Assembly: GCF_016432865.1 (NCBI RefSeq)
Contig: NC_067401.1
Span: 185,504,001-185,568,000, forward strand
Length of the DNA stretch: 64,000 nucleotides
Reading direction: 5' to 3'
From: Antechinus flavipes
Lineage: Eukaryota
The notes under the pieces are model-generated. The model saw only the letters and a list, made by a program, of their open reading frames with translations, did no database searches and was not told the DNA's origin. The number at the start of each line of letters is the position of its first letter. Position 1 is the first letter of the stretch. A program made the position numbers and the translations under genes. This document shows positions 10,552 to 10,743 of the stretch, one piece after another.

Positions 10552-10743
10552 CAGCATCACCGCATTCATTCCAACATTCAACAGGATCACGCTCCCCAGG
10601 AGTAACAGGATCGAGTCCCCCAGGTCCTGGCACTTCCTGGGGTTGGGTCTTGAGTGTACTTGGGCCCATTTGCAGGACTTGCTTGCCCATGTTGGGGGTC
10701 CCAGAGCTTCCTGGGGTGCCCCAGCCCCCACCCCTGCCCGCAT
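10552..10743 (-). CDS. SPEM3: SPEM3 exon 1 (in-frame ATG 10743; homologous ATG 10690 is out of frame by +1); encodes the single TM helix
   Basis: [31 protein letters not shown]; donor CTG|GTCAGG at 10552/10551. Confidence 0.85.

What the first reader, a model, noticed from the sequence alone, without database searches (positions are those of the whole stretch)
10552..10743. SPEM3 ancestral start codon is out of frame; an upstream ATG may rescue it
Seen: in SPEM1 and SPEM2 the ATG lies exactly 138 nt before the CTG|GTCAGG donor, with Ile-Leu at codons 27-28. In SPEM3 the strong-Kozak ATG at 10690 (aacATGG) is 139 nt from the same donor. Removing one base (e.g. a C in GTCCTG at ~10675) gives [28 protein letters not shown], with Cys20 and IL27-28 in register with the paralogues and the recalled human [20 protein letters not shown]. 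A weaker in-frame ATG at 10743 restores the frame with a new N-terminus, and the old ATG then becomes an overlapping out-of-frame start. Inference: real lineage-specific start remodelling, a loss-of-function allele, or an assembly indel.
Basis: partly seen in the sequence, partly recalled or inferred. Interest (0 to 1): 0.7.

Follow-up and report, generated by a model that had tools for sequence, protein, structure and literature searches.

The report
Shifted start codon in dasyurid SPEM3
In the yellow-footed antechinus the sperm gene SPEM3 has its original start codon one base out of register, a state shared with the dunnart, so the protein must begin elsewhere, most likely at an ATG 53 bases upstream, as the public annotation already assumes.

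Summary
On the minus strand, SPEM1 (ATG 47373) and SPEM2 (ATG 13753) have 138 nt from ATG to the exon-1 donor. SPEM3 (ATG 10690) has 139, so its old ATG misses the conserved membrane-helix frame. ATG 10743 (192 nt) is the only in-frame AUG ahead of the helix.

It is not an assembly error or a private allele. The RefSeq models of this species (Antechinus flavipes, XP_051851788.1) and of another dasyurid genus (Sminthopsis, XP_074167913.1) both start at the upstream ATG. Both are 470 aa and share their first 68 residues.

Koala keeps the old ATG in frame, yet its first ten residues match the antechinus out-of-frame reading, and it lacks one base at 10654-10657. So a +1 just after the start most likely predates the koala-dasyurid split and was compensated differently in each lineage. 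A second 1-nt loss just 5' of the ATG puts the upstream frame in register.

The upstream ATG lies in a TATG element also present in SPEM2 and eutherian SPEM3, which could be promoter.

This is an ordinary kind of event, and the start is already implicit in RefSeq.

The parts
10688..10690 (-). Ancestral SPEM3 start codon, now out of frame (139 nt to exon end; strong context CCAACATGG)
   Evidence: It is homologous to the SPEM1 and SPEM2 ATGs in alignment A1. MGK matches eutherian MGE.
10741..10743 (-). Upstream in-frame ATG (192 nt to exon end; context GGGTATGC), first codon of the RefSeq model
   Evidence: P0001 and P0004 both begin here.
10552..10743 (-). Exon-1 coding part as in the RefSeq model (64 codons); the hydrophobic helix is encoded at about 10552-10611
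   Evidence: Translation equals P0001 residues 1-64. Kyte-Doolittle maximum is 2.18 in this frame against 0.65 in the ATG-10690 frame. The Pfam Spem1 match is offset by exactly 18 residues.
10792..10794 (-). First in-frame stop (TGA) upstream of ATG 10743; it lies inside the proximal CATTGTGAC motif
10691..10702 (-). Leader block GGGACCCCC plus 3 nt: 12 nt to the ATG here, 13 nt in SPEM1 and SPEM2 (one base lost 5' of the ATG)
   Evidence: Seal SPEM3 reads LGPPAM where antechinus reads LGPPTW. The block-to-donor distance is 151 nt in all three paralogues.
10666..10684 (-). Interval that holds the extra base relative to eutherian SPEM3 and the paralogues (cannot be placed to the base; protein comparison favours about 10678-10684)
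   Evidence: Codons 1-3 match eutherians in the ATG frame. Codons 5-13 match them in the donor frame (4 of 9 identical against 0 of 7 in the ATG frame).
10654..10657 (-). Site where koala has one base fewer (antechinus ACAC, koala ATA): the koala compensating deletion
   Evidence: Koala DNA of codons 10-46 was inferred uniquely from the two overlapping reading frames of isoforms X2 and X4.
10702..10704 (-). In-frame CTG in good context (GCTCTGG), a possible non-AUG start if the transcript begins downstream of 10743; GTG 10731-10729 is a second candidate
   Evidence: Inference only.
10232..10289 (-). Exon 2 (58 nt), phase 0 in, phase 1 out
8921..10083 (-). Exon 3 coding part with stop at 8921-8923 (386 codons after the split codon)
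9939..9941 (-). Stop (TGA) reached from ATG 10690 with normal splicing: a 113-aa product without the helix
13616..13753 (-). SPEM2 exon-1 coding part (138 nt) used as reference; an in-frame upstream ATG at 13807 also lies 192 nt from the exon end
   Evidence: The dunnart SPEM2 isoform X4 model starts at that upstream ATG.
47236..47373 (-). SPEM1 exon-1 coding part (138 nt) used as reference

Best explanation
This is a real, fixed and old displacement of the SPEM3 start codon, not an error. Relative to eutherian SPEM3 and to SPEM1 and SPEM2, the marsupial gene gained one base a few codons after the ATG. In dasyurids it also lost one base just 5' of the ATG. The ATG triplet therefore sits one base out of register, while the sequence on both sides of it forms one continuous open frame into the membrane helix. 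The gene still codes in that frame. The most likely start is ATG 10743, giving a 470-aa protein that is the ancestral protein plus 18 new N-terminal residues, with Thr-Trp where the old Met was. Ribosomes that scan past the weaker 10743 would start at the strong old ATG and make a 113-aa out-of-frame by-product. Shown here: the geometry, the sharing with the dunnart, the intact ORF, and the different solution in koala. Inferred: that 10743 is in the mRNA and is used.
For: Two independent assemblies support it. Antechinus XP_051851788.1 and Sminthopsis XP_074167913.1 are both 470 aa, both start at the upstream ATG, share their first 68 residues and differ at only 16 of 470 positions, with no stop or frameshift in either.

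The donor frame is the selected one. Koala and antechinus differ at 3 of 96 inferred exon-1 bases. One change is replacing and two are silent in the donor frame, while all three are replacing in the ATG-10690 frame. The Pfam Spem1 profile matches only the donor frame, at an offset of 18. The hydrophobic helix exists only in that frame.

ATG 10743 is the only in-frame AUG between the stop at 10794 and the helix. There is no ATG in any frame from 10853 to 10744, so it would be the first AUG of any transcript starting in that span.

Mouse Spem3 knockout males are infertile, and the helix at residues 26-48 is conserved (PMC13711846). This makes silent loss of the protein less likely.
Against: No RNA evidence could be obtained, so nothing shows that 10743 is transcribed. 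The ATG sits in a TATG element at the same 193 nt from the exon end in SPEM2. The same element is readable as EYVG or EYLG upstream of eutherian SPEM3 starts. In eutherian SPEM3 the ATG inside that element would be an out-of-frame upstream ATG (hedgehog P0025), and in SPEM2 a second ATG 4 nt further upstream (13811) is out of frame. That argues the element lies upstream of the transcription start. The proximal CATTGTGAC motif ends only 48 nt before 10743. Gene-model software tends to pick the longest open frame, so the RefSeq start is weak evidence. Both dasyurids have also lost about 30 conserved C-terminal residues, which hints at some relaxation. The 18 extension codons show no difference between the two dasyurids, but at 3.4% overall divergence that carries no weight.
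Confidence: 0.6

Rival explanations
1. The transcript starts downstream of 10743 and SPEM3 is translated in the donor frame from a non-AUG codon: CUG 10704 (context GCTCTGG) or, if included, GUG 10731. It would compete with the strong out-of-frame AUG 14 nt further on.
For: There is a conserved TATG element in paralogue and eutherian leaders. In-frame near-cognate codons have a purine at -3 and G at +4. The donor frame is clearly under selection.
Against: Non-AUG starts are inefficient, and here one would sit just ahead of a strong AUG in another frame. There is no direct evidence.
Confidence: 0.13
2. Dasyurid SPEM3 no longer makes the membrane-anchored protein. The transcript starts downstream of 10743 and translation from ATG 10690 gives a 113-aa out-of-frame peptide. 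With exon 2 skipped it instead gives a 433-aa in-frame protein that lacks the helix. On this view the locus is decaying or repurposed.
For: ATG 10690 has the strongest context. Exon-2 skipping restores the exon-3 frame, because 139 nt leaves phase 1 and exon 3 expects phase 1. Koala isoform X4 is exactly such a model. The C-terminal conserved segment is lost in both dasyurids.
Against: The 470-codon donor-frame ORF is intact in two genera that split tens of millions of years ago (the date is my own knowledge). Their divergence of 3.4% is no faster than the long-term koala-dasyurid rate of 24%. Substitutions in exon 1 respect the donor frame and not the ATG-10690 frame. Exon 2 is conserved.
Confidence: 0.2
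3. Assembly indel or a private allele of the sequenced animal.
For: The assembly is PacBio long-read based with short-read polishing (PMC9290055), and such assemblies can carry 1-nt errors. The reads could not be checked here.
Against: The dunnart model from an independent assembly has the same frame and the same 68 N-terminal residues. Koala shares the out-of-frame N-terminal reading MGKQVLQ.GP. Two separate 1-nt changes flank the ATG.
Confidence: 0.03

Closest known systems
Eutherian SPEM3 (posterior-ring protein of the sperm head; mouse knockout infertile, PMC13711846)
   Same: It has the same family N-terminus, with the ...[14 protein letters not shown]... helix and the LWRHLK exon 2, and the best database matches are named SPEM3. 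It has the same three-exon layout and the same place after SPEM2.
   Different: Every eutherian SPEM3 N-terminus seen carries the MGE-type start 46 codons before the end of exon 1; a few models are extended further upstream. The dasyurid gene has that ATG out of frame, a much shorter exon 3 (470 aa in all, against about 1,000-1,200 aa in the longer eutherian models) and no C-terminal WGYQ-type segment in frame.
Koala LOC110194397 isoform X2 (XP_020822359.1)
   Same: It is the orthologue, 76% identical overall. It shares the extra base after the start, because its residues 1-10 equal the antechinus ATG-frame reading in 9 of 10 positions.
   Different: Koala lacks one base at the position of 10654-10657. 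Its old ATG is therefore back in frame with 46 codons, at the price of about 8 recoded residues. This is a compensated frameshift rather than a new start.
RefSeq models XP_051851788.1 (Antechinus flavipes) and XP_074167913.1 (Sminthopsis crassicaudata), both named 'spermatid maturation protein 1-like'
   Same: They are identical to the exon-wise translation of this window from ATG 10743, so the upstream start is already the annotated reading.
   Different: The records name the gene as SPEM1-like, not SPEM3, and say nothing about the displaced ancestral start. No paper in the held library mentions it.
Start-codon turnover with N-terminal extension from an upstream in-frame AUG (a general, well-known class of event; named from my own knowledge)
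   Same: The ancestral AUG is lost from the frame, there is an open frame upstream with an AUG, and the old AUG is left as an internal out-of-frame AUG.
   Different: Here the AUG triplet itself is intact and is displaced by a pair of 1-nt indels on either side of it. A sister lineage solved the same lesion differently.

Membership tests
SPEM family (Pfam PF15670, Spem1) | N-terminal segment matching the Spem1 profile at or above the curated cut-off | tested here: inconclusive
   P0001 residues 37-85 match profile positions 19-67 with E 6.6e-05 and 22.9 bits, below the cut-off of 27. Koala X2 scores 22.5 bits. The ATG-10690 frame gives no match. Eutherian relatives carry PF15670.
SPEM family (Pfam PF15670, Spem1) | Hydrophobic helix near the N-terminus, encoded at the end of exon 1 | tested here: met
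   The 19-residue Kyte-Doolittle maximum is 2.18 in the donor frame. The helix is described at residues 26-48 in PMC13711846.
SPEM family (Pfam PF15670, Spem1) | Gene layout shared by the paralogues: phase-0 donor CTG|GTCAGG after exon 1, then a 58-nt exon 2 | tested here: met
SPEM3 orthologue | Closest named relatives are SPEM3 rather than SPEM1 or SPEM2 | tested here: met
   Apart from one SPEM2-SPEM3 fusion model (P0007), every significant N-terminal hit has a SPEM3-type N-terminus, and most that carry a name are called SPEM3. The whole-library search gives the same picture.
SPEM3 orthologue | Position after SPEM2 and before the Mab-21-like neighbour (TMEM102 in eutherians; that name is from my own knowledge) | tested here: met
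The minus-strand order is exon 1 at 47236-47373, exon 1 at 13616-13753, SPEM3, then an ORF at 2496-3647 with Mab-21_C.
SPEM3 orthologue | Start codon 46 codons before the end of exon 1 | tested here: not met
   The distance is 139 nt, out of frame. This is the finding itself.
SPEM3 orthologue | Conserved C-terminal segment after the second GHVVFDAR motif | tested here: not met
   There is a stop at 8921-8923 in both dasyurids. The remnant is readable in another frame beyond the stop.
Start-codon turnover rescued by an upstream in-frame AUG | Ancestral AUG out of frame, and an upstream AUG in frame with no stop between | tested here: met
Start-codon turnover rescued by an upstream in-frame AUG | The upstream AUG lies within the mature mRNA and is translated | not testable with these tools
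Unitary pseudogene | Disabling lesions accumulate in the former reading frame | tested here: not met
   470 codons are open in both dasyurid genera, with 16 replacements between them.

The most novel reading that the evidence does not exclude
A single +1 frameshift three to five codons after the SPEM3 start arose before koala and dasyurids split. It was then repaired in two different ways in a gene needed for male fertility. The koala line made a 1-nt deletion about 25-30 nt downstream, recoding about 8 residues. The dasyurid line made a 1-nt deletion just 5' of the ATG, fusing an upstream open frame and its ATG to the protein. That would imply the common ancestor already translated SPEM3 from the upstream start, or lived with a damaged gene.
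Probability: 0.4. Interest if true: 0.45.

Novelty: new member of a known kind. Interest (0 to 1): 0.3.

Why it matters
SPEM3 was recently shown to be a core part of the sperm posterior ring and to be needed for male fertility in mice (PMC13711846). Antechinus is a model of extreme male reproductive investment. Knowing which start codon the marsupial gene uses decides whether its membrane-anchored protein is made at all, and it fixes the correct protein sequence for proteomics and antibodies. As evolution it is a small, clean case of one early frameshift that two lineages survived by different routes. It also shows that the RefSeq name (SPEM1-like) hides the orthology. It does not open a new kind of mechanism.

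Tried and rejected
There is therefore no read-level check of the base and no RNA 5' ends.

This ended the plan to fetch the dunnart locus, and other marsupial loci through neighbouring genes.

More marsupial orthologues: none turned up in three word-index searches (exon 3, residues 1-84 of P0001, and the 64-aa exon-1 peptide) or in one full-library HMMER search. Only antechinus, dunnart and koala were found. No devil, quoll, wombat, possum, kangaroo or opossum model is in these libraries. A sloth protein that looked divergent (P0029) proved eutherian.

Exact look-ups of exon-1 read-through ORFs, hoping for independent run-derived copies, found nothing.

A human hypothetical protein appeared as a hit. 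I left it aside and did not fetch or compare it.

Exons were given by reference, and the database's own model P0001 stood in for the joined protein. Frame bookkeeping was done piece by piece.

TATA box: I considered reading the TATG element as one. SPEM1 has CATAATAAGG there, but the SPEM2 and SPEM3 versions are poor TATA matches, so this stays open.

The two N runs (15143-15308, 29416-29547) were left untouched.

Full report
**What is in the sequence**

The window is from Antechinus flavipes. Exon 3 of the gene is 100% identical to XP_051851788.1 (P0001). Three SPEM paralogues lie on the minus strand.

- Their first exons end on the same donor, CTG|GTCAGG, at 47236, 13616 and 10552. A fourth match to the motif at 28992 has no ORF and is chance.
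- From ATG to exon end is 138 nt at 47373 and at 13753, with Ile27-Leu28 in both.
- It is 139 nt at 10690.
- In the frame that ends on the donor, SPEM3 encodes the family's N-terminus and hydrophobic helix. The frame set by ATG 10690 encodes neither. The Kyte-Doolittle maximum is 2.18 against 0.65, and Pfam Spem1 matches only the donor frame.
- ATG 10743 is 192 nt from the exon end and in frame.
- The nearest in-frame stop upstream is TGA 10794. No other in-frame ATG precedes the helix, and no ATG in any frame lies between 10853 and 10744.

**Gene model**

Exon 2 is 10232-10289 (58 nt). Exon 3 starts at 10083 and stops at 8921-8923. Both introns are GT-AG. Translated exon by exon, the window equals P0001 residue for residue when started at 10743. 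So the public annotation already uses the upstream ATG.

Starting at 10690 with normal splicing gives 113 aa ending at TGA 9941-9939. Starting at 10690 with exon 2 skipped is back in the exon-3 frame and gives 433 aa with no helix.

I sent no joined spliced sequence to any search tool. Exons went in by reference, and P0001 stood in for the joined protein.

**Not an error and not a private allele**

The 90% cluster of P0001 holds XP_074167913.1 from Sminthopsis crassicaudata, a different dasyurid subfamily and an independent assembly.

- It is also 470 aa and starts with the same Met.
- Its first 68 residues are identical to P0001, including PPTWASKSC, which is the read-through of the old ATG region in the donor frame.
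- The two proteins differ at 16 of 470 positions. Neither has a stop or a frameshift.
- The dunnart protein alone cannot show whether the old ATG triplet survives there, because Thr-Trp need not contain ATG.

**Where the indels are**

Alignment of the three paralogous leaders shows a conserved block, GGGACCCCC. It lies 151 nt from the exon end in all three genes, but 12 nt from the ATG in SPEM3 against 13 nt in SPEM1 and SPEM2. Seal SPEM3, whose model is extended upstream, reads LGPPAM where antechinus reads LGPPTW.

So there is no net length change between the leader block and the donor. One base is missing just 5' of the ATG and one base is extra 3' of it.

Against eutherian SPEM3:

- Codons 1-3 agree in the ATG frame (MGK against MGE).
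- Codons 5-13 agree in the donor frame (4 of 9 identical, including A-Q-V and S).
- The ATG frame gives 0 of 7 identical over the same stretch.

The extra base therefore lies roughly at 10666-10684, probably 10678-10684.

**Koala**

Koala isoform X2 (P0005) starts at the old ATG and has 46 codons in exon 1. Its first ten residues match the antechinus out-of-frame reading in 9 of 10 positions. From residue 13 on it matches the donor frame.

Isoform X4 (P0002) reads exon 1 in the other frame and skips exon 2. Because the two isoforms overlap in two frames, the koala DNA for codons 10-46 is determined uniquely.

- Against antechinus, koala lacks one base at 10654-10657.
- It differs at only 3 of the following 96 bases.
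- One of these is replacing and two are silent in the donor frame. All three are replacing in the ATG-10690 frame.
- From the Ala9 codon to the Asn16 codon is 21 nt in antechinus and in eutherians, by codon count, and 20 nt in koala. The koala state is therefore most simply a deletion.

The most economical history has three events: a +1 soon after the start before the koala-dasyurid split, a compensating -1 in the koala line, and no such compensation in dasyurids. An alternative with three events at these two sites, in which the ancestor was koala-like and dasyurids re-inserted a base, cannot be excluded without more species.

**Is the gene alive?**

- The donor-frame ORF of 470 codons is intact in two genera.
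- Their 3.4% protein divergence is no higher than expected from the koala-dasyurid figure of 24%, given their younger split. The dates are from my own knowledge.
- The few exon-1 substitutions respect the donor frame.
- Mouse Spem3 knockouts are infertile, and the N-terminal helix is described as conserved (PMC13711846).

Against this, both dasyurids have lost the last 30 or so conserved residues to a stop. The remnant is readable in another frame beyond 8921.

I put the chance that the helix-bearing protein is still made at about 0.8.

**Which start?**

For 10743:

- It is the only in-frame AUG available.
- It would be the first AUG of any transcript beginning within 110 nt upstream.
- It is retained in both genera.
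- It is the choice of the RefSeq models.

Against 10743:

- The ATG lies in a TATG element that sits at the same 193 nt from the exon end in SPEM2.
- The same element shows up as EYVG or EYLG in upstream-extended eutherian models. In eutherian SPEM3 that ATG would be an out-of-frame upstream AUG, and SPEM2 carries a second, out-of-frame ATG (13811) 4 nt upstream of its in-frame one. That is easier to accept if the element is promoter rather than leader.
- A CATTGTGAC motif ends 48 nt upstream of 10743. It occurs 5 times in the window against 0.32 expected, and 4 of the 5 copies lie 97-159 nt upstream of the SPEM starts.
- Gene-model software favours long ORFs, so the RefSeq start is weak evidence.

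If the transcript starts downstream of 10743, the in-frame options are CUG 10704 and GUG 10731. Otherwise the products are the 113-aa by-product or the helix-less exon-2-skipped form.

**Verdict**

The assembly-error and private-allele readings are rejected, and real start remodelling is supported.

Use of the upstream ATG is the best-supported mechanism (about 0.6) but remains an inference.

It is one more case of a well-known kind of event, already implicit in RefSeq and not mentioned in the held literature. Interest is modest.

Noticed in passing
window 10791-10799, 10815-10823, 13904-13912, 47462-47470 (minus strand): The 9-mer CATTGTGAC occurs 5 times in the window against 0.32 expected. 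Four copies lie 97-159 nt upstream of the SPEM1, SPEM2 and SPEM3 start codons on the gene strand. Its complement holds the SOX core ACAATG, so it is a candidate shared spermatid promoter element (SOX30-type; that link is from my own knowledge).
   Followed up: partly
window 13805-13811 and 10741-10744 (minus strand): SPEM2 has a TATG at the same 193 nt from its exon-1 end as SPEM3. Its ATG (13807) is in frame with the normal SPEM2 start, and a second, out-of-frame ATG sits at 13811. The dunnart RefSeq SPEM2 isoform X4 (XP_074167908.1) starts at the upstream ATG.
   Followed up: partly
window 8811-8998 (minus strand): Both dasyurid SPEM3 models end at the same stop (8921-8923). Koala runs on for about 30 residues, and the antechinus remnant of that tail (...KEDWGYQSMTKTW...) is readable in another frame beyond the stop.
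   Followed up: partly
window 10552/10083 junction; koala P0002: Because exon 1 counted from ATG 10690 is 139 nt and exon 2 is 58 nt, skipping exon 2 puts ATG 10690 in frame with exon 3 (433 aa, no helix). Koala isoform X4 is a model of this type, started from another ATG in that frame.
   Followed up: partly
window 10762-10780 (minus strand): A pyrimidine-rich tract followed by CAG|G (AG at 10764-10763) lies 19 nt upstream of ATG 10743 and looks like a splice acceptor. An upstream non-coding exon or SPEM2 read-through could therefore deliver 10743 into an mRNA. The SPEM2 AATAAA is at 11726-11721.
   Followed up: no
database proteins P0019 and P0007: A minke-whale model named 'acetylcholine receptor subunit beta' begins with the SPEM3 N-terminus, and P0007 joins a SPEM2-like N-terminus to SPEM3 exon 1. 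Both look like read-through or fusion mis-annotations in this gene row.
   Followed up: no
RefSeq names of P0001 and P0004: Both dasyurid SPEM3 orthologues are named 'spermatid maturation protein 1-like', and the koala one is 'uncharacterized LOC110194397'. By position and by best matches they are SPEM3.
   Followed up: yes
window 15143-15308 and 29416-29547: There are two runs of N (166 and 132 bases). They were left as they are.
   Followed up: no
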